In this document: positions 194-25,621 of the stretch, piece after piece
Layout of the letters: each line of letters opens with the position of its first letter
Position numbering within the stretch: position 1 is the first letter of the stretch
Assembly (NCBI GenBank): GCA_002269645.1
Contig: NIVC01004999.1
Location: forward strand, 1 to 28,868
Reading direction: 5' to 3'
Length of the DNA: 28,868 nt
Origin: Macrostomum lignano
Taxonomy: Eukaryota
Notes under the pieces: model-generated
What the model was told of the DNA's origin: nothing
The model's input: the letters and a program-made list of their open reading frames with translations, nothing else
Databases searched by the model: none
Program-made: the position numbers and the translations under genes

Positions 194-227
194 CATCTAT
201 CTATCTATCATCTATCATCTATCTATC

Positions 228-297
<70 letters not shown>

Positions 298-304
298 CTA
301 ATCA
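1..304. repeat. (TATC)n / GATA-type microsatellite in an ERCC6 intron
   Basis: Near-continuous tatc/atct tetramers with occasional tcc/atc variants, ending just before the acceptor caaacag at 311-317. Confidence 0.97.
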
Positions 305-317
305 ATCACTCAAACAG

Positions 318-3594: not shown

Positions 3595-3619
3595 GTAAAA
3601 ATGTTGCTTGATGTTATAG

Positions 3620-4915: not shown

Positions 4916-4949
4916 TGTATGTTTGGTGTTGTCTGAAGCAACATTTAAC

Positions 4950-5740
4950 GTAATTTCCGGTGTTGATTTTGGGGATATTTTATGACACTCCCGGTGTTGC
5001 TTTTAGGGATATTTTATGACACTCCCGGTGTTGCTTTTAGGGATATTTTATGACACTCCCGGTGTTGCTTTTAGGGATATTTTATGACACTTCCGGTGTT
5101 GCTTTTAGGGATATTTTATGACACTCCCGGTGTTGCTTTTGGGGATATTTTATGACACTCCCGGTGTTGCTTTTAGGGATATTTTATGACACTCCCGGTG
5201 TTGCTTTTGGGGATATTTTATGACACTCCCGGTGTCACCTTTAGGGATATTTTATGACACTCCCGGTGTTGCTTTTGGGGATATTTTATGACACTCCCGG
5301 TGTCACCTTTAGGGATATTTTATGACACTCCCGGTGTTGCTTTTGGGGATATTTTATGACACTCCCGGTGTTGCTTTTAGGGATATTTTATGACACTCCC
5401 GGTGTTGCTTTTAGGGATATTTTATGACACTTCCGGTGTTGCTTTTAGGGATATTTTATGACACTCCCGGTGTTGCTTTTGGGGATATTTTATGACACTC
5501 CCGGTGTTGCTTTTAGGGATATTTTATGACACTCCCGGTGTTGCTTTTGGGGATATTTTATGACACTCCCGGTGTCACCTTTAGGGATATTTTATGACAC
5601 TCCCGGTGTTGCTTTTGGGGATATTTTATGACACTCCCGGTGTCACCTTTAGGGATATTTTATGACACTCCCGGTGTTGCTTTTGGGGATATTTTATGAC
5701 ACTCCCGGTGTTGCTTTTAGGGATATTTTATGACACTTCT
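4950..5740. repeat. 34 bp minisatellite (gacactcccggtgttgcttttagggatattttat), ~23 copies
   Basis: gacact at 4984 and 5018 (period 34). It shares the core ccggtgttgcttt with the adjacent 35 bp array. Confidence 0.96.
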
Positions 5741-5877
5741 GATGTGGCTTCCAGCCGCAAAATTGTCTTACACGCACAATAAAATACTTGAAGAGTTGAT
5801 TCGGGAGGTGATCAGTCTCCAGAAAACTCCCACTTCCAGACACTTGAGCCTGGGAACAGAATAAGGTGTTCACTTAC

Positions 5878-6431: not shown

Positions 6432-6768
6432 CTTTGGAGGCAGGTCCGAGTCTGAGATTTTGACTCGGATTTTGGCTTGTATTTATAGTAAACTTTTGGG
6501 GTAAACAGGTTATTTTGGGAAGGTGACTCATTTGCGTTTTGGAATTTTGACCTCTCGAAAATTGCATAGAATAAACTATATAGGTTTTGCGCGTCAATTC
6601 TATTTTTAGAAATGTTGCATAAGATGATCACTCGTTGTTTCGTGGTCTTCTAAAAATGGAGTATGATCACTTGATATTTTTAGATTCTAAAATTAAGTTT
6701 TCGCATTTTTATGTTACTACTTATAGTAGTTCACTTTGTACCGTATTTGGAGATCTCTACATACTTAG

Positions 6769-7187
6769 CTCGTAGTTCCACCCGCCGCTGCCCCAACTCA
6801 GTCGAGAGCCACTTCTCCGGTGCCGCCCTGCTGTCAACTGGCCGAGTTCGCTACTCATCTGACGACCTGTTCCTACTCATCGACCTCCGGCTCCGCCGTC
6901 AGCAGCAACAGTCGGCTGGCCTCGGCCAGGCGGGCGGTCTGAACCGGCGCGCCGTGGATCTGGCCAGCAGCATTCGAGTGTTTCACACGCTGGTGCAGGA
7001 CTGCCGCAGGGACAGCTCCGAGATTGCTAGGCATTTCAGCTTTTCTACTTCAAGTAGTATGAGTAGCGACGTAGTTGGCGAGATTTTGCGACCAGACGAG
7101 GGCCACCTGCTTCGAGCTCTGCTGCGACAGATGTGCGACTTCGATCGGCCCAGCGGGATGTGGACTCTGAAGCCGGAGTTTCGCTAG
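6769..7187 (+). CDS. ERCC6: ERCC6/CSB terminal exon (C-terminal winged-helix/ubiquitin-binding region)
   Basis: Acceptor acttag|ct is phase 1. SVESHFSG...SSDDL and LLRALLRQMCDFDRPSGMWTLKPEFR* match the CSB C-terminus (PEHFSG...; VFRELLRNLCTF....GIWKLKPEY). Confidence 0.88.
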
Positions 7188-7571
7188 GAATATAACTTAC
7201 TACTCACAGTAGCAGGGACATCTTTTTCAAGAGCTTTGTCTAACTAATACTGGTATTCCGCGTAAAGTTTTTATTCTATAATGTATTACCTGTAATGTAT
7301 TTGTTTTTTGAAAAATATTCTTCCTGCAATAATGTTTAGTTAATTTGATCTGTAGAAGTACGAGTATAGCTCGTACTGAAGTTTAAATATATTACCTTTT
7401 TGACCAAATTGACCTGTTAAGCTGTCGGTTGAATATTTTAATAATTTTGTGCCAAAACTATAAGTTATAAAGTTATAAAGTTACTTAGCTACTTTTTTTT
7501 TAAACTTACCAATCTAAATTCAGGGTGCCAAATAAGGTGTTAATGAGATCTTATTCTCTTGCAAAGGTGCT

Positions 7572-8010
7572 AAATCAGGTGTCTAAGGGATCTAGTTGGC
7601 TCACCAAATCAGGTGTCTAAGGGATCTAGTTGGCTCACCAAATCAGGTGTCTAAGTGATCTAATTGGCTCACCAAATCAGGTGTCTATGGGATCTAATTG
7701 GCTCACCAAATCAGGTGTCTAAGTGATCTAATTGGCTCACCAAATCAGGTGTCTAAGTGATCTAATTGGCTCACCAAATCAGGTGTCTAAGTGATCTAAT
7801 TGGCTCACCAAATCAGGTGTCTATGGGATCTAATTGGCTCACCAAATCAGGTGTCTAAGGGATCTAATTGGCTCACCAAATCAGGTGTCTAAGGGATCTA
7901 GTTGGCTCACCAAATCAGGTGTCTAAGTGATCTAATTGGCTCACCAAATCAGGTGTCTATGGGATCTAATTGGCTGACACATATCAAATGTCTATGGGAT
8001 CTAATTAGCT
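7572..8010. repeat. 34 bp minisatellite (caaatcaggtgtctaagggatctaattggctcac), ~13 copies
   Basis: gtgtct at 7681 and 7715 (period 34). Confidence 0.95.
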
Positions 8011-8339
8011 TGCTCAAAATTACGAGTACTTACTTATAATAAAGGCTGTGGTGTCCTTGAAGGCTATGTATCTGTGACTACATAACTAAGACATAGCTCG
8101 TTCCAATCCTTAGGTAGACCACCCTCTGGTACCTATTGTTTCTATCGTTAGCACGGTTAATTAGATGTTAGTGATGGAAGTACCTTGATGCTATGATCAA
8201 GCTTTTTACGGAACAGGAAGCTAGTGTCAACTCTCAAAGTTTTTTCCTGGACTGTTTGAATCAATAAAATATCAATTCTAGTGACAATTTATTCAGTTTT
8301 AATGTGGTGGTGTTGTTAACTTAATGTTTTTCGCACTGA

Positions 8340-8790
8340 GAAGCCTTGCCATCGATCTGTCAGCAGATTGAAATACCGTGTCGTCTACCAATTGATTTGC
8401 TCTGAGAACCAGTGCACCACCTATGCTGGAGAAAACTTAACGACAGTTGTATATGAGGGCTAAGGAGCATTAGGTTCAGAACTCTTCAGGACAAGATTAT
8501 GAATTGACCGTACGTGACATGAGTGGTTGCACTTTCCTGTACGCCCCTTGGCTTGCCCACTGGACTGGCTCATCAAAACTACTACAAGTACCAAAGCATA
8601 ATTTACCTCATTCCAGTGTTTCCTGTCTTATCAACCCAAGTATCTGATATATGTATATATATATACAATTAATGTTGTTTGTTCACTCTTTCGTTTCAAG
8701 TTAAAATCTACCCTGACGAAGTGCTACTTAGGACGAAAAGCTCCCGGTAGCTACATGTATATACACTGCATGTACGAGCGTATGTTGCTT
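8340..8790 (+). mobile_element. Decayed Penelope-like element: GIY-YIG endonuclease relic plus terminal (pLTR-like) region
   Basis: 8377-8433 reads RVVYQLICSENQCTTYAGE, then after a frameshift RQLYMRAKEH (8441-8470). This fits the PLE pattern VVY.I.C..C...YIG.T.R.L..R..EH. A hammerhead-like motif follows ~240 nt downstream. Confidence 0.7.
8708..8750 (+). ncRNA. Minimal type I hammerhead ribozyme-like motif (degenerate)
   Basis: CTACC-CTGACGA-A-GTGCT-actt-AGGAC-GAAA-AGCT-C-cc-GGTAG: stem I CTACC/GGTAG, core CUGANGA and GAAA, stem II with one mismatch, palindromic AGCU mini stem III. Confidence 0.6.
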
Positions 8791-9173
8791 ATAACTTTTC
8801 TTGCTTCTCTTATCATGCCAGCTTGGAATTCAGTTTATATCAGTTTGTTCAGTTTGAAATAAACGTGGATCCAGAATCCTGGCTTCTGTAATGAAGTTTT
8901 GATATATAAGGATCCAGGCCCTTCCTAGGGTTAGAATTTTGCATATAAGTGAGTTTCCTAATATGGAATAAGGAAATGCAGCTTGCCAATAGGGTTTCTC
9001 TCTTAGTTAGGTTTGCCGTTGGGCAGCGTTTACTGTCTACGAGCTAGTTAAATTGTATGGGTGCTGTGATAGAATACCTATTTTTAAGAGCCTAGGCTTT
9101 TGTATAAATATAATAAAGCTGGACTCGGCTGCGGAGGTCAGAAATAACGCCTTTAAAGTTTATCTGACTGACA

Positions 9174-10439
9174 ATGCCTCGCTATCTTGTGTCTCTAGCC
9201 CTGCCTCTGCTGCTTCTCAGCAGCTGCTGTTTGCACGGTGAATCTTCTTTGCCGAGCTATGTCGATTTTCTTCACGACTACAGCCGCACGTACGACTGTC
9301 GATGTCATACGGTTTCTTCGGAATACGACTTCTTGTGCGAGATCGTTAAAAAAGGATTAACGGCAGCAAATAGCAGCATCAGCTGCTCCAACCTGCCTAC
9401 AAAAGTGATTGCTCACCTAAACATCAGCTGCTCCGGTTGCAGCAACTGCGTCTCAGTGAACATGCACGAGATGACTCGAGCTCATTATGACGATGACCAG
9501 CAGATAAACTTTTATCCGCCGTCGGAGATTTCACTGAACGATTGTCGGGTCAACAGTCTCAATATTAGAATGATGCAGTTGAGAGCTGAGAATGTCAGCG
9601 TCACTGAAGGCATGGAGATAGCACAGTTCGGTGTGCCACAACATCCGGGTGTTGGTGGCTACTACACCGTGAATGTCACCTACCCGACTGATTTCAACGC
9701 GTCCGATTGTTGGCTGACTTACCTGCACATCAGACGGAGCAGTATGTGGTACTTGCCCGCCTATGTTCTACACAAATGCCAGTACATTCGTAGTGTAAGC
9801 ATCGTTGAGTCGCCGATCACGTGGGTATCGATGACTGACCTACTGGCCCTTCGGTCAATCGATAGCTTGACCCTGCGCAACTGCAGCGTGAGAACGTTTG
9901 CCGATGACGCTTTGTCGAAAGCGCTGACGGCTCTAGATGAATATCTGCAACGAGTTGGTCCGCAGCCAGTCACTGAGAATCCTCAAGTAGCAGAGGCTAT
10001 TAAACGACTGCGTAAGATGAGGCAGGACTCCGGCAAACTGAACTTGGTAATCAATCTGTACGACATGATGGACTCATTCAACATCAGCTTTTCGCTGCTA
10101 TTCGGCTACCGAACCATCAGCCTGGGCAGTGGCTTTTCTCCCTCCGACATTCCGTTCGACGTAGCTCTCAGTTACTTGAACTTGCAATACAATGAGCTGA
10201 CCGAGATCCCTTTTTCTATCAGCATGTTTGGCAATTTAAATGCAATTGACCTTAGTCACAACAAAATACGCAGGCTGTATCACAGCTGGCTGTGCTGGTA
10301 CCCTCCTATACGCGAGGAAGACAAGGCAAACTCTACCAGACACTGCTATTGGTTCAGAGGATCCAGGCAGACTCTGAAAGTGCTGAACCTTTCTTACAAT
10401 CGAATCAAACAAATTGGCGAAATTCAACCTTGGCACGGG
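9174..10439 (+). CDS. Toll-like receptor-like gene A, exon 1 (signal peptide, Cys-rich N-terminus, LRRs)
   Basis: Hydrophobic leader MPRYLVSLALPLLLLSSCC, and LRR motifs LSYLNLQYNELTEIP, LNAIDLSHNKIRRL, LKVLNLSYNRIKQI. Donor ggg|gtaagg at 10440 (phase 0). Confidence 0.9.
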
Positions 10440-10502
10440 GTAAGGTGCATTGAAAAAATATTATTCATATTTTCATTCGCAGGATGGCTGTAGGCACGTC
10501 TT

Positions 10503-10801
10503 CGGCGACATTGTCCCACAACCAACGCTGAGGCCATTCTGTTCATTCCACTGACTCCACAAGCGCTCCAATACTGTACGCAGGCACTCACTCATGCACT
10601 CGCTCACACAGGGTGTGAAGTGCACAAACCCCCCCCCCCCAACCATTTTTCGTGCACACAAGCCCCAAATGTATGAGGCCGCGCGCGGAATCGAACCAGG
10701 GGTCGTTGCGCGAGAGTCAGACGGGCTTACCGCTAGTTCTCTTGATAGCCTCGTATTGGGGTTTTATAATAAAACCTGTTGACAACCCACAATGTCTTTA
10801 A
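10503..10801. mobile_element. Short interspersed element (MITE-like ends) carrying a tRNA-derived Pol III head on the minus strand
   Basis: Minus strand 10750-10675 has an A-box-like TAGCGGTAAG and a B-box GGTTCGATTCC (10697-10687) with a broken acceptor stem. Ends are gacattgtc (10507-10515) and acaatgtct-ttaa (10789-10801). The left part is homologous to the element at 14417. Confidence 0.55.
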
Positions 10802-10926
10802 ACGGACATTGTTCTAAATTCTACTAGCTGTTTCTATCTTCTCGGATACCTTTAAATGACGCCGCGACAATTGTTCTAGTAAAAAAAGATACCCAGCAAG
10901 TTTAAAACCCAACTCGTCACATCTAG

Positions 10927-12405
10927 GTGGCACTGGCCGAGCTGTACCTGCAGAATAATTTTATTGTGAGCATCAATTCGGACGCATTCAGCTATTCGCT
11001 GCTGTCAAAGAGCCTGCTGGCGCTTAACCTCGACGACAACCAACTGCCCTACATTCATTTAAAGTGCTTGAGCCGCCTGGAGACTCTGAGCATTCGAAAT
11101 GGTGGCCTGGCAAATATCGAGCTCAGTTCCATTCCCCAGTCGGAAAGGCTTAGGTGGATCAATCTGACCAACAATTCAATCAGCTCGATTTCCTACAACG
11201 CTTTCAACAATCGTCCAGCCTTGGAGACAATAGATCTAAGGAACAATAGCTTAGAAAATATGTATGCATACAGCTTCAACATGTCGGAGCGTCCAACCTT
11301 AAGCTCTCGTGTTGTCTTGTTAATAAGCGGGCAAAAGGTTAAAACGGTCTGCAACTGCTATCACGTCTACGCTTACATAACAGAGGAAGAGACCGACTTG
11401 GAAAGGACTAACTACCACTATCCAGCGATCCCTAAGCACGAATTGGAAATTACGTCATGCCTATTCTTCTTGAAGGACGGTGCTAACTCAACTAGAAAAC
11501 TAAGTGGTGCATCGTACCGCGAGTTCTTATGTGCCTTCAGTGGCGACTATGAACAGAAATTACCGAAAAAATACTGCGAACAACCCCCACAATCTCAGTA
11601 TGCGTCGTACGCAAATGAACCAATCCCCATAACAGGCCTGACTAACAGCACGTTTGAGTGTTGGGAGACTTGCGTACCCGACTGCAGCTGCTACCACACG
11701 GCCAAGTGGGAGTTGTCCGACCTCAACTGTACCAATATTGATGTAAACATGGTCAGCATACTGCTGCGCATCCCTGTAAAGTACATGTACTTTTCCGGAA
11801 TCAGGGAGTCCGACTATTTCCACAGAATAACAAATTCCACACTGAAATGGGAAACACCAAAACTCCGCGATGCCTTAGTAGTTTTGTTTTTCAACAATAG
11901 CAACATTCGCTACATCGAAGAGAATGCGTTCGTAGATAAAACTTCGATAAAGTTTCTATACTTGGACGACAACAGGCTTGAAAAAGTACCGGCAAAAGCT
12001 TTCTGCTCACCGAATTCAGATCTGATTCGGCTAAGTCTATTGAGAAACAACCTAACTTGGATTGACCCCTATTTGTTAAATTCTAGCTGTCTTCCAAATT
12101 TAAACGAACTCAAGATCAGCAGCAATCCGTGGCACTGTCAGTGTAACGAAATGTGGACAAGTCTTCACAAATCTCTAATTAGTGTGGCGCGCACAACGCA
12201 AGTTGTCCCAGATTTCGAAAGTATGCGTTGCCAAGTGGATCCGGCAATTATTGAAGCCTGCGAATTGAACAGATGGAATGATGCCTGGCGACTTGATTGC
12301 CAAAAAATTCTTTTAAGCAATGGATCTCGCGACTATCCAGTGAGCGATGAGGGCGGACTCGTCAGGGTGTGCGAGCTTATAGCGGACTCGGCAGCACAGC
12401 AGTGA
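10927..12405 (+). CDS. TLR-like gene A, exon 2 up to an in-frame TGA (LRRs, LRRCT, LRRNT, LRRs, LRRCT)
   Basis: Acceptor catctag|gtg is phase 0. Multiple LxxLxLxxN repeats, an internal Cys cluster (CNCYH...CWETCVPDCSCYH...LNC) and a juxtamembrane NPWHCQC. TGA at 12403-12405. Confidence 0.9.
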   Translation: MALAELYLQNNFIVSINSDAFSYSLLSKSLLALNLDDNQLPYIHLKCLSRLETLSIRNGGLANIELSSIPQSERLRWINLTNNSISSISYNAFNNRPALETIDLRNNSLENMYAYSFNMSERPTLSSRVVLLISGQKVKTVCNCYHVYAYITEEETDLERTNYHYPAIPKHELEITSCLFFLKDGANSTRKLSGASYREFLCAFSGDYEQKLPKKYCEQPPQSQYASYANEPIPITGLTNSTFECWETCVPDCSCYHTAKWELSDLNCTNIDVNMVSILLRIPVKYMYFSGIRESDYFHRITNSTLKWETPKLRDALVVLFFNNSNIRYIEENAFVDKTSIKFLYLDDNRLEKVPAKAFCSPNSDLIRLSLLRNNLTWIDPYLLNSSCLPNLNELKISSNPWHCQCNEMWTSLHKSLISVARTTQVVPDFESMRCQVDPAIIEACELNRWNDAWRLDCQKILLSNGSRDYPVSDEGGLVRVCELIADSAAQQ

Positions 12406-13231
12406 AGGCAGATCGTCCTGATCATTCTGTCCTCATTATTCGGTCTCGCGCTGCTCGGTTTCGCGGTGCTCGCTGTCCGCCGTCGACACCGACTGCTGGC
12501 CGTGGTTCGAGTCCTCATCCTCCTCAAGTACCAGAGCAGTCGGCGACTGCAGCAGCAGACATCTCGGGACTCGCTGCCGTACGACGCGATGCTGTGGGCG
12601 TCGGACAGAGACCAGGACTGTCTGGTCGACGTGCTGAACTGCGTGCGCAGCGCCTCGGGCGGAGACGAGCTCGAGCTGTGCGTTCCGGAGAGCTTCCTCT
12701 ACTCGGACCTGTGCTCCTGTCCGCTCACCTACTTTGACTGTCCGGCTGAGGGAGCCAAGTTCAGCGGCAAGGTGGTGGTGGCTTTGTCCGAGAGGTTTCT
12801 CGACACCCAGTACCTGGCTCTGTGTCAGGTGATTCGAGATCTCGACAGCTTAGGTCGGAATCCGTTCAAGGACATCGTGTTTCTGCGCCTGAGCTCGCGC
12901 AGAGTGTCGCTTCAGCGCCAGAGACAGCTCGGACCTGAGGACGTGGAGGCGTTCCACACTCTGCAGAGAATCCTCGCAGGGAGCGACATCGAATACAAGT
13001 CCGTTGACTGGGAATACAGACTCATCGAGCGCATTCGGAACCGAGATCCGGCCGCCGTTCTCGTGTTTGACTCGTCTGTTCCGCCAGAGACTTCAGCGGC
13101 GGCCACGCCCGCGGTAGCTGACCGCCTTGATATTACCGTCGGGACCGCATCGGAGCCTGAAGAGCTATTAGACCTTCCAGGCGAGGGGCAGCCATTAATT
13201 GTGGACGTTGAGCAGACAATAGATTTTATAA
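12406..13231 (+). CDS. TLR-like gene A, exon 2 continuation beyond the premature stop (TM helix, TIR-like domain 1)
   Basis: Same frame as 10927. RQIVLIILSSLFGLALLGFAVLAVRRRHR is a TM with a basic stop-transfer; PYDAMLWASDRD is box-1-like; KVVVALSERFL. Donor a|gtaagt at 13232 (phase 1). Translated only if the stop is read through, absent in vivo, or bypassed. Confidence 0.7.
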
Positions 13232-13339
13232 GTAAGTACACAAATTATTGCGGCACTGTTCTGAAATCGGCTTCAAAACGATGAGCTCGGAATTTCCACC
13301 ATTACCCGTATAATATATTATCATATAACCAATATAAAG

Positions 13340-13752
13340 GAAGCCGCACCATCCTGAGCACGATTCGGGACTGGCCGCCGTTCCACTCGGACAAAGTGCC
13401 GGAGGTCTTCATCCTGTCTGCTCCTGAGTCCGCCTCTGACTCCGAGTCCCGAGCCGACCCAGATTCGAGCTCGAACACCGTCGTCGAGCTCATCGTTCGT
13501 CGCCTCCAAGGCGTTCGGCTCGGCACCAACGACGCGGCCCTGACTGCTCGCTGGCCTGACAACTTCGAGGGCGCCTCGCCAGCCGGCCGCATCAACAGCT
13601 TCCTGATGAAGCGAACTCGCCAGTTCGTGCTGCTGCTCAGCAACGGCCTGCTCAGTTGGCTCAGAGACGAGGCCGAGCTGCAGTGCGAGTTCCAAGCCTT
13701 CCTCGCTGCGAACTCGTTCAGACGCCGCCTGCTGGTAGTTCAGGTTGGACAG
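13340..13752 (+). CDS. TLR-like gene A, exon 3 (second TIR-like domain)
   Basis: Acceptor tataaag|ga is phase 1. EVFILSA...VVELIVRRLQGVRL...DNFEGASPAGRINSFLMKRTRQFVLLLSNGLLSWLRDE..CEFQAF...RRLLVV follows TIR secondary-structure order. Donor cag|gtgaga at 13753. Confidence 0.7.
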
Positions 13753-13857
13753 GTGAGACTCTCGCAATCAGCTGAGTGTGCAGGTCTGAGTTTTGAGTAG
13801 CTTTGCCTCACTGCTGTGTGAGTGAGACATACAGTATCGATCTTTATTCACTCGCAG

Positions 13858-14016
13858 GTGGACAGCCGGTCGAGAGCTCGCTACCGGGCGCTGGCGAATC
13901 AGCGACTGGACGGCGGGGAGTCCGGGCCGGCGACGAACTGGTTCGACATGAGCGCCGAGGACCGCAACGTCGAGGCACTGGGGCTGTGGCTGGATGGCGT
14001 GCTGTACAAGAAGTGA
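13858..14016 (+). CDS. TLR-like gene A, terminal exon
   Basis: Acceptor attcactcgcag|gtg is phase 0. It reads VDSRSRARYRALANQRL...LGLWLDGVLYKK* and is conserved in paralog B. Confidence 0.7.
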   Translation: MDSRSRARYRALANQRLDGGESGPATNWFDMSAEDRNVEALGLWLDGVLYKK

Positions 14017-14830: not shown

Positions 14831-15049
14831 GCTATCATCCTGAAAGTGCACAAAGTGCATGACATTTGCAAGGGGTCTTGGATGCAACAGTCCCGGCCGT
14901 TAAATGTGTTAAATTGGGTTTCCAATTAAAAGGAGCAATGAACTGACCTACCAACTAGTGTCTCTTTGTTGTCAATATCGAAGTAATAGCCTATTAAAAG
15001 GACAATGATGCAACTGGGGATCGCACGTCCTTCTTTACTAACTCATTCA

Positions 15050-15695
15050 AGCAATCCCCAGACTAACCTTCAAGCAATCCCCAGACTAACCTTCAAGCGA
15101 TCCACAGACTAGCCTTCAAGCGATCCACAGACTAACCTTCAAGCGATCCCCAGACTAACCTTCAAGCGAGCCCCAGACTAACTTTCAACCAATCCACAGA
15201 CTATCAAGCGATCCCCAGACTAACCTTCAAGCAATCCCCAGACTAACCTTCAAGCGAGCCCCAGCCTAACCTTCAACCAATCCACAGACTAGCCTTCAAG
15301 CGATCCCCAGACTAACCTTCAAGCAATCCCCAGACTAACCTTCAAGCAATCCCCAGACTAACCTTCAAGCAATCCCCAGACTAACCTTCAAGCAATCCCC
15401 AGACTAACATTCAAGCGAGCCCCAGACTAACCTTCAAGCGATCCCCAGACTAACCTTCAAGCAATCCCCAGAATAACCTTCAAGCAATCCCCAGACTAAC
15501 CTTCAAGCAATCCCCAGACTAACCTTCAAGCAATCCCAGAATAACCTTCAAGCAATCCCCAGACTAACCTTCAAGCAATCCCAGACTAACCTTCAAGCGA
15601 TCCCCAGACTAACCTTCAAGTGATCCCCAGACTAGCCTTCAAGTGATCCCTACACTAACTAACCTTCAAGCGATCCACAGACTAACCTTCAAGCG
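15050..15695. repeat. 23 bp minisatellite (caagcaatccccagactaacctt), ~28 copies
   Basis: Direct tandem units with small variants (gcga/gcaa, ccac/cccc). Confidence 0.95.
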
Positions 15696-18231
15696 AATCG
15701 GAGTTGATTAAACGCTCATAAGAGCAAAGCGTGACTATGTCAGGGGCAGATGAAAGCTGGTACATGTAGCTCGTAGATGCAGCTATATCAAGTATCACAA
15801 AGTCAAAGGTTAGTGTTGGCGCCAGCGTTCTTGATAGCTATAGCTTTTAAACTTCGTTTTACAACCTAAATCTGACAAATCTGACAATAAATTAATCGGT
15901 GGTAATTACGACATATGAAATTTTAAATATTTTAAAGTCTGGGGATTGCTTGAATGAGTTAGTGAAGGAAGGACGTGCGATCCCCAGTTGCATCATTGTC
16001 CCTTTAATCGGCTTTAAACCAACTGTTTTTACGATTGCACGATGCAAACTTTGTTTTAGATTGTTTTCGCTATCAACCCGTTTGTATTGCTAAAGTCTAT
16101 GCATTTGCCAGCAAGGATAGAGCCTGTGTCAGTTCGGAATTTCAACCTTTGCCAACCGGTTTGTTGTCAGCCTTCTCTCATGACACAAAAAACTGCAGAA
16201 ATTTTTCTCTCTTCGACTGGATACTATCCGAAAAATAGTTGCATACTAGATGACAAAAATAGTTTAGAAGAAAGCATCTATGCTTCCTAACCCTCGTTTT
16301 GCAGTATGTTAATAAAAAAGTGTTCTGAAAACGCCACTAGCTGTACGATATTATGAAGCAGAATGTATGCGCACGAGCTGTGCAGACACAAGAAACGGCT
16401 GAAAGTTCCTTTTTTGTTTTTTATTTAAATCTACCCTGTCTGCAGGGTACTGGCAGACTGGCCAGTACCCTAGGAAGGAAACTGGCAGGGGGTATACTCG
16501 TATTATACTGCAATTGTCTCTTAGACTGCACTGTCTATATATAATTTTCAACCATTATAGAACTAGCATAATAAGAATATGTAATTACATGTACTTGTAT
16601 TCGGATTGGCTCTTCTCCAACTGCTGCATGAACTCGATATGCATGTAAAATCTGAGATGGAGTTTAAATCTGACCTGCTAAATTCAAGCCTGATATTGTA
16701 ATGGACATTATGTATCCTGTGCGACAACATTATCACAATATAAGTTAATTTAGTGCTTCAATTATGCTAGCACGACTCAGCGGGTATGATGTTGCCCCAG
16801 GCGTCAGGTCACTTGCGCGGGTGATAAGCATGCAGCCCATAATCAAACGAAGCTTGCTTTCTGGTTCACAAGGACAGGTAGTGCTGCTGGAAGAAGACTT
16901 CAGCCTCATCAGGCATTGTGGTGAAGGGCGTTGTCCGCGCAGAATAGGGAATCTAGCTACTGCTTCAGATACTCTAACGGCCTCGTTGCTCCCTGGATGT
17001 GTGCAAATGTATTTAGTACATGTTGAAGGCCCAAGTTCTCTCTGTGAAGTGTCTGCATTGTTCTCCGTTGATGAACATTGCAGCTTGAGATCCAGGCTCT
17101 ATGTACGAGTTGGACATAGCCAACAAGAAGATTCAAGTCCATTTAGACTTAACTTGTACATGTACGTCATTCTCGCGTGACACCACGGCATGGTTGTACA
17201 TATTTTTCATCAAGTTGTACCTCGTTAGGATTTCGTCAGATGTCGCAGACTCAGTGGAGTGGTTCGATGGCTTAATTCTGTAGATGCTATTACGGTCGTA
17301 CTCTTGATTCCAAAAGTAAGTAGACCACGATTTATCGTTCAATATCTGTAATGTTTATTAGCTAAATACAGCTTTTCATAGTCTTCTATTGGCTATCGAA
17401 TGTACAATAGATCTGCATCTGCGCCAGAAATATTTAATGACGCTAGCTACAAACTGTTCGATTGTTGACCTGCCCGAGACCTACTGAGCTGTTTTTGCCA
17501 TCGCTCAGGCTGCAGCTATTTTTGCGTAGAACGCTTGTTTTTTCAGGAAATTGTCTACGGAGCAGTAGGAGCAGTAATTGTGCGTACATATTCGAGCAGG
17601 GTTTTTTTAAGACGAGCCTGTCCTCCGCAGGCACGCAATGACTGTACAGTTCCGTGCATGCACAAGAGAGATTAATAGCTAGTGTCTGTCGTGATGTGCT
17701 CAGGTGTGCTCAGGTTTATTATATAGGCTCTCCAACGCATTGCTACGCATACTTAATGATAAATAATATGCAGGAAAGCGAAAAATAAATTCTGCAATAA
17801 GTGTCTGCTATACGAGTAATTAACTTTTTCCAGGTAAGTACGAGTATTTTGTCTGAAACGTTTGGATAGATAAGCGAACAGAAAAATATTTAATCTTGAA
17901 ACATGCCTCGTTTAGTGTTTTCCTTAGCATGATGCAGCTATGCAAATTGTCAAGTCAAGAATCTTCCCGCTTGGTCATTACTTATTATCCATATGCTGAC
18001 GGCTTTTGATGGTTAGTGAAACGGTTTTTACAAGCTCAAAATTTGAAATCGTCGAAAAAGTGTTGCTAAGCTAGCTCCAAGATTCGAGACTTCGATGTTG
18101 TTTCTTCGATTTGATGTTTCGATGTTGTCAAAAATTTTGTCTGGAATGATGTGAAATTCATGTCTACCCGACAATTGACTGCCACAGATTGACTGCCAAC
18201 CCTAACTTAAAAGCAAGCCAAAATTGGCACT

Positions 18232-18430
18232 GGCAGCCAAATGTCACTGACAGTCAAATGTCACTGACAGTCAAATGTCACTGACAGTCAAATGTCACTG
18301 ACAGTCAAATGTCACTGACAGTCAAATGTCACTGACAGTCAAATGTCACTGACAGTCAAATGTCACTGACAGTCAAATGTCACTGACAGTCAAATGTCAC
18401 TGACAGTCAAATGTCACTGACAGTCAAATG
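18232..18430. repeat. 17 bp minisatellite (cagtcaaatgtcactga), ~11 copies
   Basis: cagtc at 18251 and 18268 (period 17); near-perfect units. Confidence 0.96.
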
Positions 18431-19229
18431 ACGATGTTCCGTGAAATTTCGAGCTTGTGAAAGATTTCAAATTCTTGTGATTCCGAAACTTGTGTGGAGG
18501 GCAAAACATCGAGATAACTTTACTTTATGCGACTTAAGCTTGAATGAAAACATTTAATAAAAATGAAACATATAATTTTAATACTGTTAACAAGGACCAC
18601 TGTAGTAGAAGGACTCGGCACTCACGAACCATGGAAAAAGTTTTGAAGGCTGATTTTTAAAGTTTGATGCTGTCTCTTCAGAAACAGATATTAAGATGAT
18701 GAGTTTGCATCCCTACTGCTCATTTGTCTGCCTGTTGCTTTCTTCTGTGATGCATTTGGAGTTCGCAGTAGGCGATTAACTATTTCCAGGTGAATATTAG
18801 AGCAGCAGGTACTTAGCCCCTATAACACAGTATCCATATCTGTACATACTGCCTGTACAGATGTTACAGACATACGCGTGGTAAATTTTGAAAAATCATT
18901 AAGGTTTATAAGCAAATTTTAAAACAATTATGGCATTGTACGAGATAGATGTCTCGTAGTTGAAAAGTCTTACGTTTAATTAGTCTGTGGTACTGGGTAG
19001 CCATTTATTGGAAATAGCTAAGTGTACTAGAAAAAATTGACAGTAAAATGCATGAAAATGAGCAAAGCAGAAATAAAAGGCAAAATGTGAGATCAGTAGA
19101 AACTTGGTATCAAAAATGCGACATTCTGGAAAACAAACATAAATTGACTGAACTCTGAAACAATGCAGAAAAGGTAACTGTAAGGCTATTTATAACTAAT
19201 ACGGTAACACAATAATCATCTTTCTAAAT

Positions 19230-20217: not shown

Positions 20218-21528
20218 ATGCAAGCACCGACAGAAAGTCTCATACTGCTACTGGCGTGCACTCTGACGGCGCTCCTGCCGGCTGCTGCAGCTGCTCAGCC
20301 TCAGTTGGATGACGATCTGAACAAATACATTCTACTGCCGAAAAACTTCAGTCTAACGCACGAGTGCTGCTGCGAGAACATGATGAACTCGCCCAGGTTT
20401 GACTACTTCTGCCAGGTGTCTGAAAAACCCTACCCGAATGCCAGCTGCATGACTGGTCTGGTAGACTGCTCCGATCTGCCGGGCAGAATCGTGTACAGCT
20501 TGACGATAAACTGTACATCTTACCCATCTGTGACTGTCAATCTGCGAGCTCTCACCGTGGCTCACAACTCAAGCAGCATCGAGAACAAAATCAGCTATCC
20601 GCCACAGCTGGTACATCTAGTGAACTGCAACGTAAACGGTTTCGAAGTTGGAATCCTTGAGCTGCCAGCTGAAAATGTCTCCCTCGATTACGGCATGGAA
20701 GTTGCACCGTTTGGAAGTCCGGATAGGCCGGGCGTTGGCGGTTACTACACTGTTAACGTCACTTATCCGCGTGAATTCCGCCAGGCTGACTGTTGGATGG
20801 TGGAATTGAACATTGAAAATGCAAGCACTCTTTGGTATCTGCCGTCCTACCTGTGTCACAAGTGCAACTCGCTCAAGAACATCTTTATATCTAATTCGTC
20901 AATCGAATGGATCTCGATTCGCGATGTTCTCTCTTTGCATAACGTACGAAGTTTTTCTCTGACCCACAGCCGCCTAAAGTACTTTGCAAGCGACGCTCTG
21001 AGCACAGCTATCAATCTATTAGATAGATACCTGGAAGCTGGAGTGCAAACCGGCTGCATCAATGACACTGAAGCCGCGATCAAAGCTCTAAACTCAATAC
21101 GCAGCCGCACAGGACGGTTGAGTAGCCCCACCCAGCTATACGACACGATGGACACCGCCAATATCGACTTCACCATGCTATTTGGCTACAGATTGAGAAG
21201 CGCTTTCTCGGGCAATAAAACCGAGCCCGCCTGCGACATGCCTGGCAAGATGGCCCTAACCGATCTCGATTTGTCTTTCAACGCTTTGACGGATATACCT
21301 TTCTCAATTAGCATGTTCGATCAGCTGAACCGGGTCAATCTTAGCCACAACAGAATCCGCAGTTTGTACCACGGCTGGATGTGCTGGTATCCGCCAATTC
21401 CCGAAGACCAGAAGAACACTTCAAACCGGCACTGCTATTGGTTCAGAGCGGCTCGAGCTAGTCTGAAGGTCCTGGACTTGTCATTTAACGAAATCAATAT
21501 GATCGGAGAGATACAGCCTTGGCACCAG
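20218..21528 (+). CDS. Toll-like receptor-like gene B, exon 1
   Basis: Leader MQAPTESLILLLACTLTALLPAAAAA. It is colinear with gene A exon 1 (shared PGVGGYYTVNVTYP, IPFSISMF, CWYPPI, HCYWFR, IGEIQPWH). Donor cag|gtgagc at 21529 (phase 0). Confidence 0.9.
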
Positions 21529-22370
21529 GTGAGCTAATTATTAATACTAAATTGTTGGTTATCATTATACAAAGCAATTGAAAGGGAGTCATTGAAGTTT
21601 GGGTTGGTTGTGGCCGTTTCAAGACCCCGCATTCGTAAAGTGTTGGAACACGATGACACTGATATCGCTCACTCTGCGATCCTATCGATATGAGTAATAG
21701 TCGAACCGGTCGATAAATTGAACCTTCGCAGTAATCAGACACCGTTTTATGGCTCAATTATCTTTTCATTTAGCTCTTAGCCGACTACGTAAAAAATTGT
21801 TACAGAATGATCAAACAGATTTTTAGAAACCCATGAGTCGGGCTGTGTCATTTTAATGGTTTTAAGCAAATACTCATTTAAGTAAAAAAGATATAAGCAA
21901 AACAATTTTTGTCTCGAAAAAAGGAAAAAAGTGTTTTTCCCTACTTTTTTCGGTTAATTCTGCCGTCTAATATTTTCAAAGAAACGCAATTGCTTCCCCA
22001 CACTTGGCTGGGCCGTGTCTGTCTACGGTTAAATGCTTTTTCATTTCCTTGGCCAGGCCAAAGAAATGATTGGCTAGGCCAAAGAAATGAGCTCTCAGCT
22101 GGAGAATTCGGCCCAGAGAAGGGAAGAAGCGGAAAGTAAAGCTCTAAACCAAACTGACTGCAATCGATAGCTTTTCGGGCCGGTGGACTAGAAACGCCGA
22201 GACATCTTATCCAGGTTTTTGCATGGGGCTTCCAGTTGATAAAATGAGGATTTCAGGTTAACATCAGTCTCTAGAATGAAGCTTTGCTGTGGGCTCCAAT
22301 CATATGCATGTTTAACTTGAAAAAAATCAGTTAGTTAAGTGTCTCAAAGAATTTTAATATGATTTTTCAG

Positions 22371-24569
22371 AAAAAAATGTTTTCTTAAATTCACCTCTCG
22401 GCTTAGCGTTGCTGAATTTATATCTGGATGAAAATCTTTTGTCGTATTTTCACCTGGAATGCCTGACCCGACTGGAAGTCCTGAGTCTCGAGGGCTGTCG
22501 AATCGCGAATATCGAGCAGGAATCGCTGCCCAAGTCGAAATCGCTCAGGGAAATCAATCTCGATAGCAACAGAATTTTCGCCATCGCTCCGGGCGTTTTT
22601 GAACAGCTTGAAAAGCTTGAGTTTGTTCGGCTACATCATAACAGGCTGATGCACTTTTATGCGAACAGTTTCAAAACGCCCCCAAGATCGACCTTGGCGT
22701 CCAGAGTCATCATACACATTGCCAACCAGAGCGATATACCCATATGCGACTGCAGCCACGTATATAAGAAGATACTGCAGGATGAGGAGTTTGGAAATCC
22801 CCAAAAAAGCTACGTTTATCCGAGGATTTTGCCAGAAGATATGTCCACCGAGTGCCAGTTCTTCTCCAGATTCAGCTCAACCAGAGTGGTAAAGAAACTA
22901 AGCGAATCAAATCAAAGTGAGTTTCTATGTGAATTCCAGGACAATCAAAAGCACAAGCTGCCCTGGAATTACTGTAACGAAAACGTCACTATTATGGGTC
23001 GAGAAAAGTGCTTTGTGAAGTGCATCTACGGCTGCCGGTGTTACCACGATGACGGATGGGATATTTCTGACCTGGACTGCACCCCGGGCAATTCCACAGT
23101 CACCACCGACCTGGTTAAGATGCGATTCGAATTCCCAATCAAGTACATGTTCATGGCCGGACTTAAGGACTCGGAGTTCTTCCGGCACGTCTCCAAGGGA
23201 TCATTTAAATGGTTGAACGAAAGCGATTCAAATGAATTACTGTTCTTGCAGCTGAATAATAGCAACGTCAAATATGTTGAGAAAGATGCGTTCGCAAATT
23301 TTGAGAACATAGTTGTTATTTACCTGCACGACAACAATATTACCAGCATTAATCCGAGCCCTTTTATTGGAAACTGCTTTTTAAATAAAAATCTAAACCA
23401 GATCACGCTGCATAACAACAGAATGAACTACATCGACCCGGCAATAATTAATGGAACGTGTCCTGTGGGCCTTTCAGGTGTGAGCTTAAGCGGCAATCCG
23501 TGGCACTGCTCCTGCCATGGAAAATGGATCGAGCTCCACAAAACACTCATCCAGGACTCTAGAAAAACACAAACAGTATCGGACTTCCGAAATATGTATT
23601 GCACAATTGACGCGTCTATAGTTGGTGCATGCACGGAGAACCGTGAAAATCTGCAATGGAGTGACGTATGCCAAAATGCAAATGATACGGCTAATTACCC
23701 AGTTGCCGACGAAGGCAGACTTGTCAAAGTTTGCGAGCTCATAGCGGACTCGGCAGTGCAGCAGCGAAGGCAGATCGTCCGGATGATTCTAACCTCAGTA
23801 TTCGGTCTCGCGCTGCTCGGTGTCGCGATGCTCGCCGTCCGCCGTCGACACCGACTGCTGGCCGTGGTTCGAGTCCTCATCCTCCTCAAGTACCAGAGCA
23901 GTCGGCGACTGCAGCAGCAGGCATCTCGGGACTCGCTGCCGTACGACGCGATGCTGTGGGCGTCGGACAGAGACCAGGACTGTCTGGTCGACGTGCTGAA
24001 CTGCGTGCGCAGCGCCTCGGGCGGAGACGAGCTCGAGCTGTGCGTTCCGGAGAGCTTCCTCTACTCGGACCTGTGCTCCTGTCCACTCACCTACTTTGAC
24101 TGTCCGGCTGAGGGAGCCAAGTTCAGCGGCAAGGTGGTGGTGGCTTTGTCCGAGAGGTTTCTCGACACCCAGTACCTGGCTCTGTGTCAGGTGATTCGAG
24201 AGCTCGACAGCTTAGGTCGGAATCCGTTCAAGGACATCGTGTTTCTGCGCCTGAGCTCGCGCAGAGTGTCGCTTCAGCGCCAGAGACAGCTCGGACCTGA
24301 GGACGTGGAGGCGTTCCACACTCTGCAGAGAATCCTCGCAGAGAGCGACATCGAATACAAGTCCGTGGACTGGGAGTACAGACTCATCGAGCGCATTCGG
24401 AACCGAGATCCGGCCGCTGTTCTCCTGTTGGACCGAACAGCGGAACTGGAGTTACCGACGGCAGCTGCTGGCGGTTCGGAAAGACCAGCCGCTACAGCAA
24501 CTGCGGAGCTTCCTGATCTTCCTGACGATGAGCAGGCGCTGATTGTCGACGTTGAGCAGCCAGTTACGA
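22371..24569 (+). CDS. TLR-like gene B, exon 2 (LRRs, Cys clusters, TM, TIR-like domain 1); 5' boundary uncertain
   Basis: The frame is open from 22358 through ORF 22409-24598. Homology to gene A starts at EKNVF after the acceptor tttttcag (22370). NPWHCSC, TM IVRMILTSVFGLALLGVAMLAV, YDAMLWAS. Donor a|gtaagt at 24570 (phase 1). Confidence 0.85.
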
Positions 24570-24792
24570 GTAAGTATAACTGCCAGAGCTTTTTGTAGTC
24601 TCACTTGCCCCTTTAGTTGTTAATTTCGTTCCGAAAATTAAACTCTGATACGCAACTCTAGAGTACTACACGTAGCTCGTACATTGAGTTGAATTAGACA
24701 TTTTCTTATCTCGAGAAACTCATGATGCATCTAAAGAAACAATTTTTATTTGTAAAGCTCCAAGCTAACGTTTTAATCAACATATTCAAAAG

Positions 24793-25211
24793 TTCGAGCC
24801 GCCGCCGCTCCCGGTGCGGCTGTCAGTGACTGGCCACCGTTCCACTCGGACAAAGTGCCGGAGGTCTTCATCCTGTCTGCTCCTGAGTCCGCCTCTGACT
24901 CCGAGTCCCGAGCCGACCCAGATTCGAGCTCAAACACCGTCGTCGAGCTCATCGTTCGTCGCCTCCAAGGCGTTCGGCTCGGCACCAATGACGCGGCCCT
25001 GGCTGCTCGCTGGCCTGACAACTTCGAGGGCGCCTCGCCAGCCGGCCGCATCAACAGCTTCCTGATGAAGCGAACTCGCCAGTTCGTGCTGCTGCTCAGC
25101 AACGGCCTGCTCAGTTGGCTCAGAGACGAGGCCGAGCTGCAGTGCGAGTTCCAAGCCTTCCTCGCTGCGAACTCGTTCAGACGCCGCCTGCTGGTAGTTC
25201 AGGTTGGACAG
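24793..25211 (+). CDS. TLR-like gene B, exon 3 (second TIR-like domain)
   Basis: Acceptor aaaag|tt is phase 1. From 24828 it is nearly identical to gene A exon 3. Donor cag|gtgaga at 25212. Confidence 0.7.
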
Positions 25212-25252
25212 GTGAGACTGAGTGAGCAGGTGTGAGTTTTGAGTAGCTTTGC

Positions 25253-25424
25253 CTCACTGCTGTGTGAGTGAGACAGCTCTCCCTCACTGCTGTGTGTGAG
25301 TGAGACAGCTCTCCCTCCCTGCTGTGTGAGTGAGACAGCTCTCTCTCACTGCTTTGTGAGTGAGACAGCTCTCCCTCACTGCTGTGTGAGTGAGACAGCT
25401 CTCCCTCACTGCTGTTTGAGTGAG
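25253..25424. repeat. 30 bp intronic minisatellite (ctcactgctgtgtgagtgagacagctctcc), 5 full copies plus 1 partial
   Basis: Units start at 25253, 25283, 25315, 25345, 25375 and 25405. Confidence 0.93.
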
Positions 25425-25447
25425 TATCGATCTTTATTCACTCGCAG

Positions 25448-25621
25448 GTGGACAGCCGGTCGAGAGCTCGCTACCGGGCGCTGGCGAATCAGCGATTGGA
25501 CGGCGGGGAGTCCGGGTCGGCGACGAACTGGTACGACATGAGCGCCGAGGACTGCGACGTCGAGGCGCTGGGGTTGTGGCTGGACGGAGTGCTGTACAAA
25601 AAGGCTGATTTACGTAAATAA
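25448..25621 (+). CDS. TLR-like gene B, terminal exon
   Basis: Acceptor ctcgcag|gtg. It reads VDSRSRARYRALANQRL...LGLWLDGVLYKKADLRK*, with TAA at 25619-25621. Confidence 0.7.
   Translation: MDSRSRARYRALANQRLDGGESGSATNWYDMSAEDCDVEALGLWLDGVLYKKADLRK

What the first reader, a model, noticed from the sequence alone, without database searches (positions are those of the whole stretch)
12372..12480. Single CGA>TGA change just before the TM helix: a soluble decoy paired with a signalling receptor?
Gene A reads cag cag TGA agg cag atc; gene B reads cag cag CGA agg cag atc. The stop falls after the last LRRCT and four codons before the TM, which would give a clean 914 aa secreted ectodomain. Everything downstream (TM, TIR1, TIR2, splice sites) remains open, so the change is recent, polymorphic, read through, or an error. 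It is a CpG transition, so chance is plausible. Two downstream introns make the mRNA an NMD candidate. A soluble/membrane receptor pair would parallel soluble TLR5 in fish.
Basis: partly seen in the sequence, partly recalled or inferred. Interest (0 to 1): 0.72.

Follow-up and report, generated by a model that had tools for sequence, protein, structure and literature searches.

The report
Young nonsense allele in flatworm Toll-like receptor
One copy of a Toll-like receptor gene in the recently genome-duplicated flatworm Macrostomum lignano carries a real C-to-T stop just before its membrane anchor, but a nearly identical intact copy sits elsewhere in the same genome, so this is most likely a very young, tolerated knockout and not an evolved soluble decoy.

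Summary
Gene A (9174-14016, + strand) has an in-frame TGA at 12403-12405, codon 915, two residues before the TM helix. Gene B has CGA at 23765-23767.

The window is a whole contig of the Macrostomum lignano assembly GCA_002269645.1, a neopolyploid with three subgenome copies of most loci. I recovered all three copies of gene A. Two contigs carry TGA (the window and NIVC01002037.1). The third (NIVC01000178.1) carries CGA and encodes an uninterrupted 1380-aa receptor. Over 4.2 kb (exon 1, intron 1, exon 2) the copies differ at only two bases, so the stop is extremely young.

- The A and B ectodomains are only 42% identical.
- Only the 3' TM and cytoplasmic module is 96-99% identical, introns included, which indicates gene conversion.
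- There is no SECIS, no read-through structure and no early poly(A) signal.
- The in-frame 45-nt GT..AG that bypasses the stop occurs only in ab initio models.
- "TIR1" is at best a very divergent TIR, and "TIR2" is unsupported.

Most likely this is early loss of redundant copies after genome duplication. A soluble/membrane pair made from the A alleles themselves remains possible but untested.

The parts
12403..12405 (+). In-frame TGA, codon 915 of gene A. The homologous codon is CGA (Arg) in the third gene A copy, in all gene B copies, and aligns with Arg in paralogue P0062.
9174..10439 (+). Gene A exon 1: signal peptide and N-terminal LRR ectodomain. Donor GTAAGG, phase 0.
   Evidence: identical to GenBank PAA61380.1 (P0064)
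10927..13231 (+). Gene A exon 2. It holds the LRRs with internal and C-terminal cysteine clusters (to 12402), the stop, the TM helix, the TIR-like region and a linker.
12412..12477 (+). Predicted TM helix IVLIILSSLFGLALLGFAVLAV (residues 918-939), followed by RRRHR.
   Evidence: Kyte-Doolittle 19-residue mean peaks at 2.71
12523..13071 (+). It is a very divergent TIR-like sequence: box 1 YDAMLWAS and the betaC motif VVVALSERFL are in register with Toll TIRs, but there is no BB-loop motif.
   Evidence: no Pfam hit; hhalign probability 70%, E 4e-5; fold search inconclusive
13340..13752 (+). It is conserved in paralogue P0062 but has no detectable TIR similarity.
13858..14016 (+). Gene A exon 4 with the normal stop at 14014-16. 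The first poly(A)-like signals are at 14112 and 14123.
12367..12411 (+). A 45-nt in-frame GT..AG segment (VCELIADSAAQQ*RQ) that the UniProt ab initio models A0A1I8HAC1 and A0A1I8JIR6 splice out to bypass the stop. The RNA-guided GenBank models do not splice it.
12345..13071 (+). First tract of the 3' module homogenised between gene A and gene B (equivalent to 23707-24433): 96% identity overall and 98.6% from 12501 onward. The ectodomain DNA upstream is about 50% identical.
13369..14013 (+). Second homogenised tract (equivalent to 24828-25603). It covers exon 3, intron 3 and exon 4 at 94-99% identity, with a 30-nt minisatellite expanded in intron 3.
20218..25621 (+). Gene B: E1 20218-21528, E2 about 22409-24569, E3 24793-25211, E4 25448-25621. 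CGA is at 23765-67. Sister contigs encode 1383 aa.
22404..22408 (+). Lesion in the window's gene B. Ninety-one nt are replaced by AGCG (net loss 87 nt), which removes the intron-1 acceptor and the first 29 codons of exon 2 (VALSYLILRGNRIMSVNPDAFAYSPLATS).

Best explanation
Gene A is one of three subgenome copies (S, L1, L2) of a Toll-like LRR-TM receptor gene in the neopolyploid flatworm Macrostomum lignano, line DV1. A single C-to-T substitution turned Arg915 (CGA) into TGA in the allele carried by the window and by contig NIVC01002037.1. The copy on NIVC01000178.1 keeps CGA and encodes the complete 1380-aa receptor. The truncated and intact alleles differ at only 2 of about 4200 bases, so the stop arose very recently, and that alone explains why the TM and cytoplasmic exons and the splice sites are still perfect. 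The most likely reading is a young loss-of-function or truncation allele that is tolerated because redundant copies exist, that is, the first step of gene loss after genome duplication. Its mRNA has the normal 3' end and two exon junctions after the stop, so it would probably be reduced by nonsense-mediated decay. Any secreted 914-aa ectodomain would be a by-product.

Shown here: the stop, its distribution among contigs, the near-identity of the copies, and the intact sister copy. Inferred: neutrality, decay of the mRNA, and the absence of a selected soluble function.
For: - The window is a whole 28,868-nt contig of GCA_002269645.1. The gene B model PAA46199.1 lies on a contig of exactly that length.
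- The diagnostic 18-mer carries T in the window and in L002 (NIVC01002037.1). It carries C in L003 (NIVC01000178.1), where the flanks are of A type, and in all B copies.
- A three-way alignment over window 9100-13300 shows only two substitutions: 12403 (T,T,C) and the synonymous 13018 (A,A,C).
- L003 encodes an uninterrupted 1380-aa ORF. L002, like the window, has only the codon-915 stop.
- GenBank already carries the 914-aa product (PAA61380.1) and a model that reads through Arg (PAA88685.1).
- DV1 holds three subgenomes diverged by 1.4-2.4%, all represented in this assembly (PMC10733133). The assembly has 180 Mb of duplicated blocks (PMC5730564).
- No SECIS or other Rfam family is present. 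There is no unusual structure after the stop (z = -0.78), and no poly(A) signal before 14112.
- The tail exons of the TGA copies carry no more private nonsynonymous changes than those of the CGA copy.
Against: - No reads were inspected, so a consensus error cannot be formally excluded.
- The window may be a haplotype-switch chimera. It is identical to L002 up to about 13300 and identical to L004 afterwards, and 36% of this assembly's length lies in chimeric scaffolds. The number of independent TGA copies is therefore 1 or 2.
- If TGA truly sits on two distinct subgenomes, it was copied between them by gene conversion or homeologous exchange. That fits neutral homogenisation but also fits selection for the truncated form.
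- The copies are too similar for any dN/dS test, so neutrality is assumed, not shown.
- The locus is transcribed, but RNA-seq reads cannot be assigned among identical copies.
Confidence: 0.65

Rival explanations
1. A functional soluble/membrane pair built from gene A itself. The TGA allele or alleles secrete a 914-aa ectodomain identical to that of the membrane receptor encoded by the CGA copy. The soluble form would act as a decoy or, like trout TLR5S, as an amplifier. The two forms would be held together as fixed heterozygosity between subgenomes.
For: The TGA and CGA copies have 100% identical ectodomains. The stop lies cleanly between the C-terminal cysteine flank and the TM helix. TGA appears on two contigs whose downstream flanks differ by 1.6-2%. 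DV1 keeps L1 and L2 as permanently different chromosome copies.
Against: There is no dedicated 3' end or poly(A) signal for a short transcript, and two exon junctions follow the stop. No time has passed for selection to leave a signature, because the alleles differ by 2 nt in 4.2 kb. The second TGA contig may not be independent. There are no expression or protein data specific to the T allele.
Confidence: 0.12
2. One reading: gene A's soluble ectodomain acts as a decoy for the neighbouring signalling receptor gene B, in parallel with fish TLR5S and TLR5M.
For: The two genes are in tandem and share a nearly identical TM and cytoplasmic module. B reads CGA.
Against: The ectodomains are only 42% identical, with indels. 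The shared part is exactly the part a truncated A would lack. An intact A exists. B in this window carries its own lesion. TLR5S is an old gene fixed across teleosts (PMC9857387).
Confidence: 0.03
3. Assembly or consensus error: the true base at 12403 is C in all copies.
For: The assembly comes from PacBio reads and has clear indel errors (the L004 copy of A exon 4 is frameshifted). Only 64% of its bases are error-free by REAPR. The window and L002 may derive from the same reads.
Against: T occurs in two contigs after Pilon polishing with Illumina and RNA-seq data. It co-segregates with a second substitution 615 nt away. Two gene models from the older ML2 assembly excise exactly the 15 codons around the stop. 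Substitution errors in a high-coverage consensus are rare (general knowledge).
Confidence: 0.08
4. The stop is bypassed in the mRNA, either by splicing out the in-frame 45-nt GT..AG segment 12367-12411 or by UGA read-through or Sec recoding, so a membrane receptor is still made.
For: A GT..AG of 45 nt (a multiple of 3) spans the stop, and UniProt models use it.
Against: The donor AGG|GTGTGC is poor and there is no polypyrimidine tract. The RNA-guided models of the TGA, CGA and B copies all retain the segment. The same ab initio models also skip 105 nt of open frame, so they are prone to spurious mini-introns. There is no SECIS and no downstream structure. The UGA-A context is not a known leaky one (general knowledge).
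Confidence: 0.04

Closest known systems
Nonsense alleles and nascent pseudogenes of redundant duplicates after whole-genome duplication (fractionation)
   Same: A single premature stop in one or two of three near-identical subgenome copies, an intact sister copy, and no other lesion. The genome is a documented neopolyploid (PMC10733133).
   Different: It is caught extremely early, at 0.05% divergence from the intact copy. It lies in a tract that is homogenised among subgenomes, whereas the flanks differ by 1.6-2%. The truncation point would leave a cleanly secretable ectodomain.
Teleost soluble TLR5 (TLR5S) paired with membrane TLR5M
   Same: An LRR ectodomain without TM or TIR, encoded beside or alongside a full-length receptor after genome duplication.
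   Different: TLR5S is an old gene conserved across teleosts, and in trout it is reported to amplify TLR5M signalling (PMC9857387). Here the TM and cytoplasmic exons are still intact behind the stop, the difference is one SNP, and conservation cannot be shown.
Toll / Toll-like receptors of the multiple-cysteine-cluster (P-type) kind
   Same: Signal peptide, long LRR ectodomain with internal and C-terminal cysteine clusters, single TM helix, and a cytoplasmic domain that aligns in register with Toll TIR box 1 and betaC. UniProt names the family 'TIR domain-containing' or 'Protein toll'.
   Different: There is no Pfam TIR hit and the fold search does not recover TIR. A second conserved cytoplasmic domain of unknown fold is present. 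A published survey counts zero TLRs in M. lignano (PMC8609888).
Concerted evolution of signalling modules between tandem receptor paralogues by gene conversion
   Same: The A and B 3' modules are 96-99% identical, introns included, while the ectodomains are 42% identical.
   Different: This is context for the finding and not the finding itself. The direction and timing of conversion were not determined.

Membership tests
Toll-like receptor (LRR-TM-TIR) | Extracellular leucine-rich repeats with cysteine-rich flanks | tested here: met
   Pfam LRR_8 E 7.6e-31, LRR_4 E 5.6e-16. NPWHCQC...C...C flank before the stop. UniProt names the product 'LRRCT domain-containing'.
Toll-like receptor (LRR-TM-TIR) | Single transmembrane helix after the ectodomain | tested here: met
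   Residues 918-939, hydropathy peak 2.71, followed by RRRHR. In the window copy it lies behind the stop.
Toll-like receptor (LRR-TM-TIR) | Cytoplasmic TIR domain | tested here: inconclusive
   No Pfam TIR hit for A or B; paralogue P0062 gives E 0.14, below the cut-off. hhalign against arthropod Toll TIRs: probability 70%, E 4e-5, 99 columns in register. PDB sequence search found nothing relevant. The AF2 model has pLDDT 60.5 and Foldseek finds no TIR.
   hhalign against the TIR profile gives probability 0.9%, and against domain 1 gives 0.07%. No Pfam hit.
Soluble decoy/co-receptor TLR (TLR5S-like) | ORF ends after the ectodomain, with no TM or TIR in the product | tested here: met
   914-aa ORF that ends 2 residues before the TM helix.
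Soluble decoy/co-receptor TLR (TLR5S-like) | Ectodomain closely related to that of the membrane partner | tested here: not met
Against the intact gene A copy the feature is met: the ectodomains are identical.
Soluble decoy/co-receptor TLR (TLR5S-like) | The truncated form is evolutionarily maintained (fixed, conserved across lines or species) | not testable with these tools
   Only one inbred line is available, and the alleles differ by 2 nt in 4.2 kb. No other Macrostomum relative exists in the protein libraries.
Soluble decoy/co-receptor TLR (TLR5S-like) | Stable transcript and secreted protein | not testable with these tools
   The locus is in an RNA-guided annotation, but reads cannot be assigned among identical copies. 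There is no early poly(A) signal.
Young pseudogene / null allele of a duplicated gene | Premature stop in an otherwise conserved ORF, with an intact duplicate elsewhere | tested here: met
Young pseudogene / null allele of a duplicated gene | Relaxed constraint or reduced expression of the disabled copy | not testable with these tools
   There are too few substitutions, and no allele-specific expression data.
Recoded UGA (selenocysteine or programmed read-through) | SECIS element, or a stimulatory context or structure | tested here: not met
   No Rfam match in the window. Downstream fold z = -0.78.

The most novel reading that the evidence does not exclude
A soluble/membrane receptor pair caught at birth. 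In a neopolyploid whose subgenomes are permanently heterozygous, one SNP gives a secreted ectodomain from one or two subgenome copies and the identical ectodomain on a signalling receptor from the third. The truncating allele may have spread between subgenomes by gene conversion. This would sit in a phylum reported to have no Toll-like receptors at all.
Probability: 0.1. Interest if true: 0.7.

Novelty: new member of a known kind. Interest (0 to 1): 0.3.

Why it matters
As a stop codon it is ordinary: a redundant gene copy starts to die after genome duplication, and GenBank already lists the 914-aa product. Its value lies in the context.
- It is a dated example, about 0.05% divergence, of the first lesion in post-duplication gene loss, inside a tract that is being homogenised among subgenomes.
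- The truncation would release a complete ectodomain identical to that of a still-intact receptor. That is the raw material from which soluble receptor genes such as TLR5S could arise, and M. lignano has transgenesis and RNAi with which to test it.
- The gene family has a Toll-like architecture with a barely recognisable TIR. This bears on the published statement that flatworms lack TLRs.

Tried and rejected
- **Word-indexed homologue search with the B tail:** it found nothing. This was a false negative, because proteins holding that exact tail are in the collection.
- **Single-sequence AF2 of the tail:** pLDDT 42, unusable.
- **AF2 with a 4-sequence alignment plus Foldseek against PDB:** no significant hit, so the fold test of TIR failed to decide.
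- **Profile search of PDB sequences:** only two chance hits at E 0.18-0.32 to a bacterial kinase. I did not follow them.
- **P0063 from the exhaustive search:** a repetitive protein, so a spurious hit.
- **Contig L001:** it starts too far downstream to show the gene A stop site.
- **P0001:** it has no contig on record.
- **First gene B model:** it lacked an in-phase acceptor. This turned out to be a real 87-nt deficit in the window.
- **Exon 3 table:** I used a wrong anchor for L002 and redid it.
- **dN/dS of the ectodomain:** rejected as impossible. A against B is saturated, and A against A has 1 synonymous site.
- **CpG hypermutability as an explanation:** not supported by CpG observed/expected.
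- **Literature search for the locus tags:** nothing found.
Full report
**1. The observation**

The two strings exist exactly as described: CAGCAGTGAAGGCAGATC at 12397-12414 and CAGCAGCGAAGGCAGATC at 23759-23776, with none expected by chance. From six-frame translations and splice-site inspection gene A has four exons: 9174-10439, 10927-13231, 13340-13752 and 13858-14016. RNA-guided GenBank models of sister copies use the same junctions. The hydrophobic helix spans residues 918-939 (12412-12477) and is followed by RRRHR, so the stop lies two residues, not four codons, before it. The frame behind the stop is open to the normal terminator, and two introns follow it (13232-13339 and 13753-13857).

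**2. What the genes are**

Pfam finds only LRR families in both proteins and nothing in the 465-aa cytoplasmic part. The best non-self relatives of the ectodomain are chaoptin and insect or spider Toll/TLR proteins.

The cytoplasmic part has two conserved segments, both shared with a 29-35% identical paralogue, P0062.
- **Segment 1.** It aligns in register with arthropod Toll TIR domains: YDAMLWAS against FDAFISYS, and VVVALSERFL against TIIVLSEQFL. hhalign gives probability 70% and E 4e-5. Pfam TIR, however, is absent or sub-threshold (E 0.14 for P0062). An AF2 model of moderate quality (pLDDT 60.5) recovers no TIR by Foldseek. I call it TIR-like and unproven.
- **Segment 2.**

UniProt labels these proteins 'TIR domain-containing' or 'Protein toll'. 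A published survey, in contrast, reports zero TLRs in M. lignano and in flatworms generally (PMC8609888).

**3. A and B are old paralogues with a recently shared 3' module**

blastn aligns A to B at 96% only from 12345/23707 onward: 12345-13071, 13369-13829 and 13833-14013. The ectodomain-coding DNA is about 50% identical, and the ectodomain proteins are 42% identical. Intron 3 is inside the high-identity block, so this is gene conversion or concerted evolution and not purifying selection. Within the first tract the TM part (12346-12500) has 19 fixed A/B differences, and 12501-13071 has only 8. The stop lies 58 nt inside the tract. Its immediate flanks carry A-specific bases at 12395/96 and 12419 in all A copies.

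**4. Where the window comes from, and the other copies**

The ectodomain search identified Macrostomum lignano. Cluster look-up showed that the window is a whole 28,868-nt contig of GCA_002269645.1 and revealed sister models. I fetched four further loci.
- **L002** (NIVC01002037.1) carries a gene A copy annotated as a 914-aa protein (PAA61380.1), followed by a 1383-aa gene B.
- **L003** (NIVC01000178.1) carries a gene A copy whose model reads ...AAQQRRQIV... through the TM helix and tail (PAA88685.1).
- **L001 and L004** carry gene B copies.

L003 and L001 overlap by 2.6 kb with no mismatch, so they form one haplotype. L004 has a scaffold gap and then equals the window from 13304 onward, with 2 mismatches in 14 kb. 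That leaves three haplotypes:
- H1: window plus L004.
- H2: L002.
- H3: L003 plus L001.

This matches the published structure of the DV1 genome: three subgenomes S, L1 and L2 (SSL1L2), 1.4-2.4% apart, all present in this assembly (PMC10733133; PMC5730564).

**5. The decisive comparison**

The 18-mer has T in H1 and H2 and C in H3, with identical A-type flanks. A three-way alignment of window 9100-13300 (exon 1, intron 1, exon 2) shows only two substitutions: 12403 (T,T,C) and 13018 (A,A,C), the latter a synonymous AGA/CGA Arg change. Polarised by gene B, T at 12403 is derived in H1/H2 and C at 13018 is derived in H3. H3 encodes an uninterrupted 1380-aa protein. H2, like the window, has no lesion other than codon 915.

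The stop is therefore real in the assembly and very young, and an intact, otherwise identical copy of gene A is present in the same genome. Downstream of about 13300 H1 differs from H2 and H3 by 16-20 substitutions per kb. The gene A region is therefore itself homogenised among the subgenomes.

**6. Caveats on copy number and error**

The window is identical to H2 up to about 13300 and identical to L004 afterwards. It is either a true bridging contig, with assembly breaks where the haplotypes become identical, or a haplotype-switch chimera. Thirty-six percent of the assembly's length lies in chimeric scaffolds. TGA is thus certain in at least one subgenome copy and probable in two.

Two UniProt models from the older ML2 assembly (A0A1I8HAC1 and A0A1I8JIR6) excise exactly the 15 codons VCELIADSAAQQ*RQ. 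One of them has an H1-type exon 4 (RN), which suggests that the stop is linked to an H1-type tail there too. ML2, however, shares its PacBio reads with this assembly.

A consensus error is unlikely. T survives Pilon polishing with Illumina and RNA-seq data in two contigs, and it co-segregates with a second substitution. I could not inspect reads.

**7.

- **Read-through or Sec.** There is no SECIS or any other Rfam family in the window, and the 118 nt after the stop fold no better than shuffles (z = -0.78).
- **Splicing bypass.** The 45-nt GT..AG at 12367-12411 is in frame. Its donor GTGTGC is poor and it has no pyrimidine tract. The same segment is retained in the RNA-guided models of the TGA, CGA and B copies. 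The ab initio models that use it also skip 105 nt of open frame elsewhere.
- **Dedicated short transcript.** There is no AATAAA or ATTAAA between the stop and 14112, so the T-allele mRNA would carry about 1.4 kb of 3' UTR with two junctions and is a plausible target of nonsense-mediated decay.
- **CpG hotspot.** CpG observed/expected is 0.86 for the window and 1.03 for the gene A CDS, so there is no evidence of methylation-driven decay.
- **Decay of the tail in TGA copies.** Each copy has 1-3 private nonsynonymous changes in exons 3-4, the CGA copy included. This is not informative.

**8. Interpretation**

The best-supported reading (confidence 0.65) is a young nonsense allele in one or two of three redundant subgenome copies, that is, incipient gene loss after genome duplication. 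The 'decoy for gene B' idea fails on the ectodomain comparison. The better version of the idea, soluble A with membrane A from different subgenomes, is not excluded (about 0.1) and is testable. The TLR5S analogy is loose, because TLR5S is an old gene fixed across teleosts and is reported as an amplifier in trout (PMC9857387).

**9. Gene B in this window**

Relative to L001 and L004, the window has 91 nt replaced by AGCG at 22404-22408. This removes the intron-1 acceptor and 29 codons, and both remaining AGs are out of phase. GenBank marks this CDS as partial. The window and L004 are otherwise identical, so this is either an assembly discrepancy or a rare allele. Either way, 'gene B is the intact receptor' holds for the sister contigs and not for the window as given.

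**10. Verdict**

The feature is a new member of a known kind, and GenBank already lists the truncated product. Interest is 0.3. Most of the value lies in the context: the neopolyploid genome, the homogenised tracts, and a Toll-like family in a phylum said to lack TLRs.

Noticed in passing
window 12345-13071 and 13369-14013 (equivalent to 23707-24433 and 24828-25603): The TM and cytoplasmic module of genes A and B is 96-99% identical at the DNA level, intron 3 included, while the ectodomains are 42% identical. This indicates gene conversion or concerted evolution of the signalling half of two old tandem paralogues.
   Followed up: partly
window 22404-22408: The window's gene B has 91 nt replaced by AGCG (net loss 87 nt), which removes the intron-1 acceptor and 29 codons of exon 2. 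Contig L004, otherwise identical, has the intact version. This is an assembly discrepancy or a rare allele.
   Followed up: yes
window about 8000-13300 against L002 and L003: The three subgenome copies are virtually identical across gene A exons 1-2 and 1 kb upstream (0-4 substitutions in 5 kb). They differ by 1.6-2% immediately downstream. This points to recent homogenisation among subgenomes, or to a haplotype switch in the window contig.
   Followed up: partly
genes A and B, and paralogue P0062 (PAA67356.1): M. lignano has a small family of LRR-TM receptors with Toll-like architecture and a barely detectable TIR-like domain. A published survey (PMC8609888) counts zero TLRs in this species and in flatworms.
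   Followed up: partly
window 13340-14016 and 24793-25621: A second conserved cytoplasmic domain (WPP...TRQFV(L/I)LL...RR(L/I)LV) is shared with P0062. It has no Pfam, TIR or other detectable relative, so it is a lineage-specific domain of unknown fold.
   Followed up: partly
window 13799-13829 and 25245-25428; L002 about 9440-9880: A 30-32-nt minisatellite (AGCTCTCCCTCACTGCTGTGTGAGTGAGAC) lies in intron 3. Each unit contains GTGAG donor-like motifs. It has 1 unit in the window's gene A, about 6 in gene B, and a much larger expansion in L002's gene A.
   Followed up: no
window 1-310, 774-1885, 2253-2994, 3582-5870, 7470-8046, 14978-15709, 18171-18476, 26341-26801: The window is unusually dense in tandem minisatellites, with periods of 4/8, 21-22, 18, 53, 35, 34, 34, 23, 17 and 16 nt. 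This fits the reported 15% simple and tandem repeat content of the genome and the assembly breaks at these sites.
   Followed up: no
window 6711-7187 (+): This 158-aa ORF equals a gene called in L002 with a WHD_Rad26_CSB Pfam hit. In L003 the upstream neighbour is a 1333-aa SNF2/CSB-like helicase gene, so the window holds its 3' part.
   Followed up: no
L004 2412-2666 and 3216-3370: Scaffold NIVC01000230.1 has an N gap that ends inside gene A intron 2. The window is probably the unmerged contig that fills it. L004's copy of gene A exon 4 is frameshifted by single-base indels, which illustrates residual indel errors in the assembly.
   Followed up: partly
UniProt A0A1I8HAC1 / A0A1I8JIR6 (P0001, P0066) against window 12367-12411 and about 11740-11845: Ab initio gene models hide the stop behind a 45-nt pseudo-intron and also skip 105 nt of open frame (AFSGDY...IPITG). 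Database users would therefore see a 'full-length' receptor for a truncated locus.
   Followed up: yes
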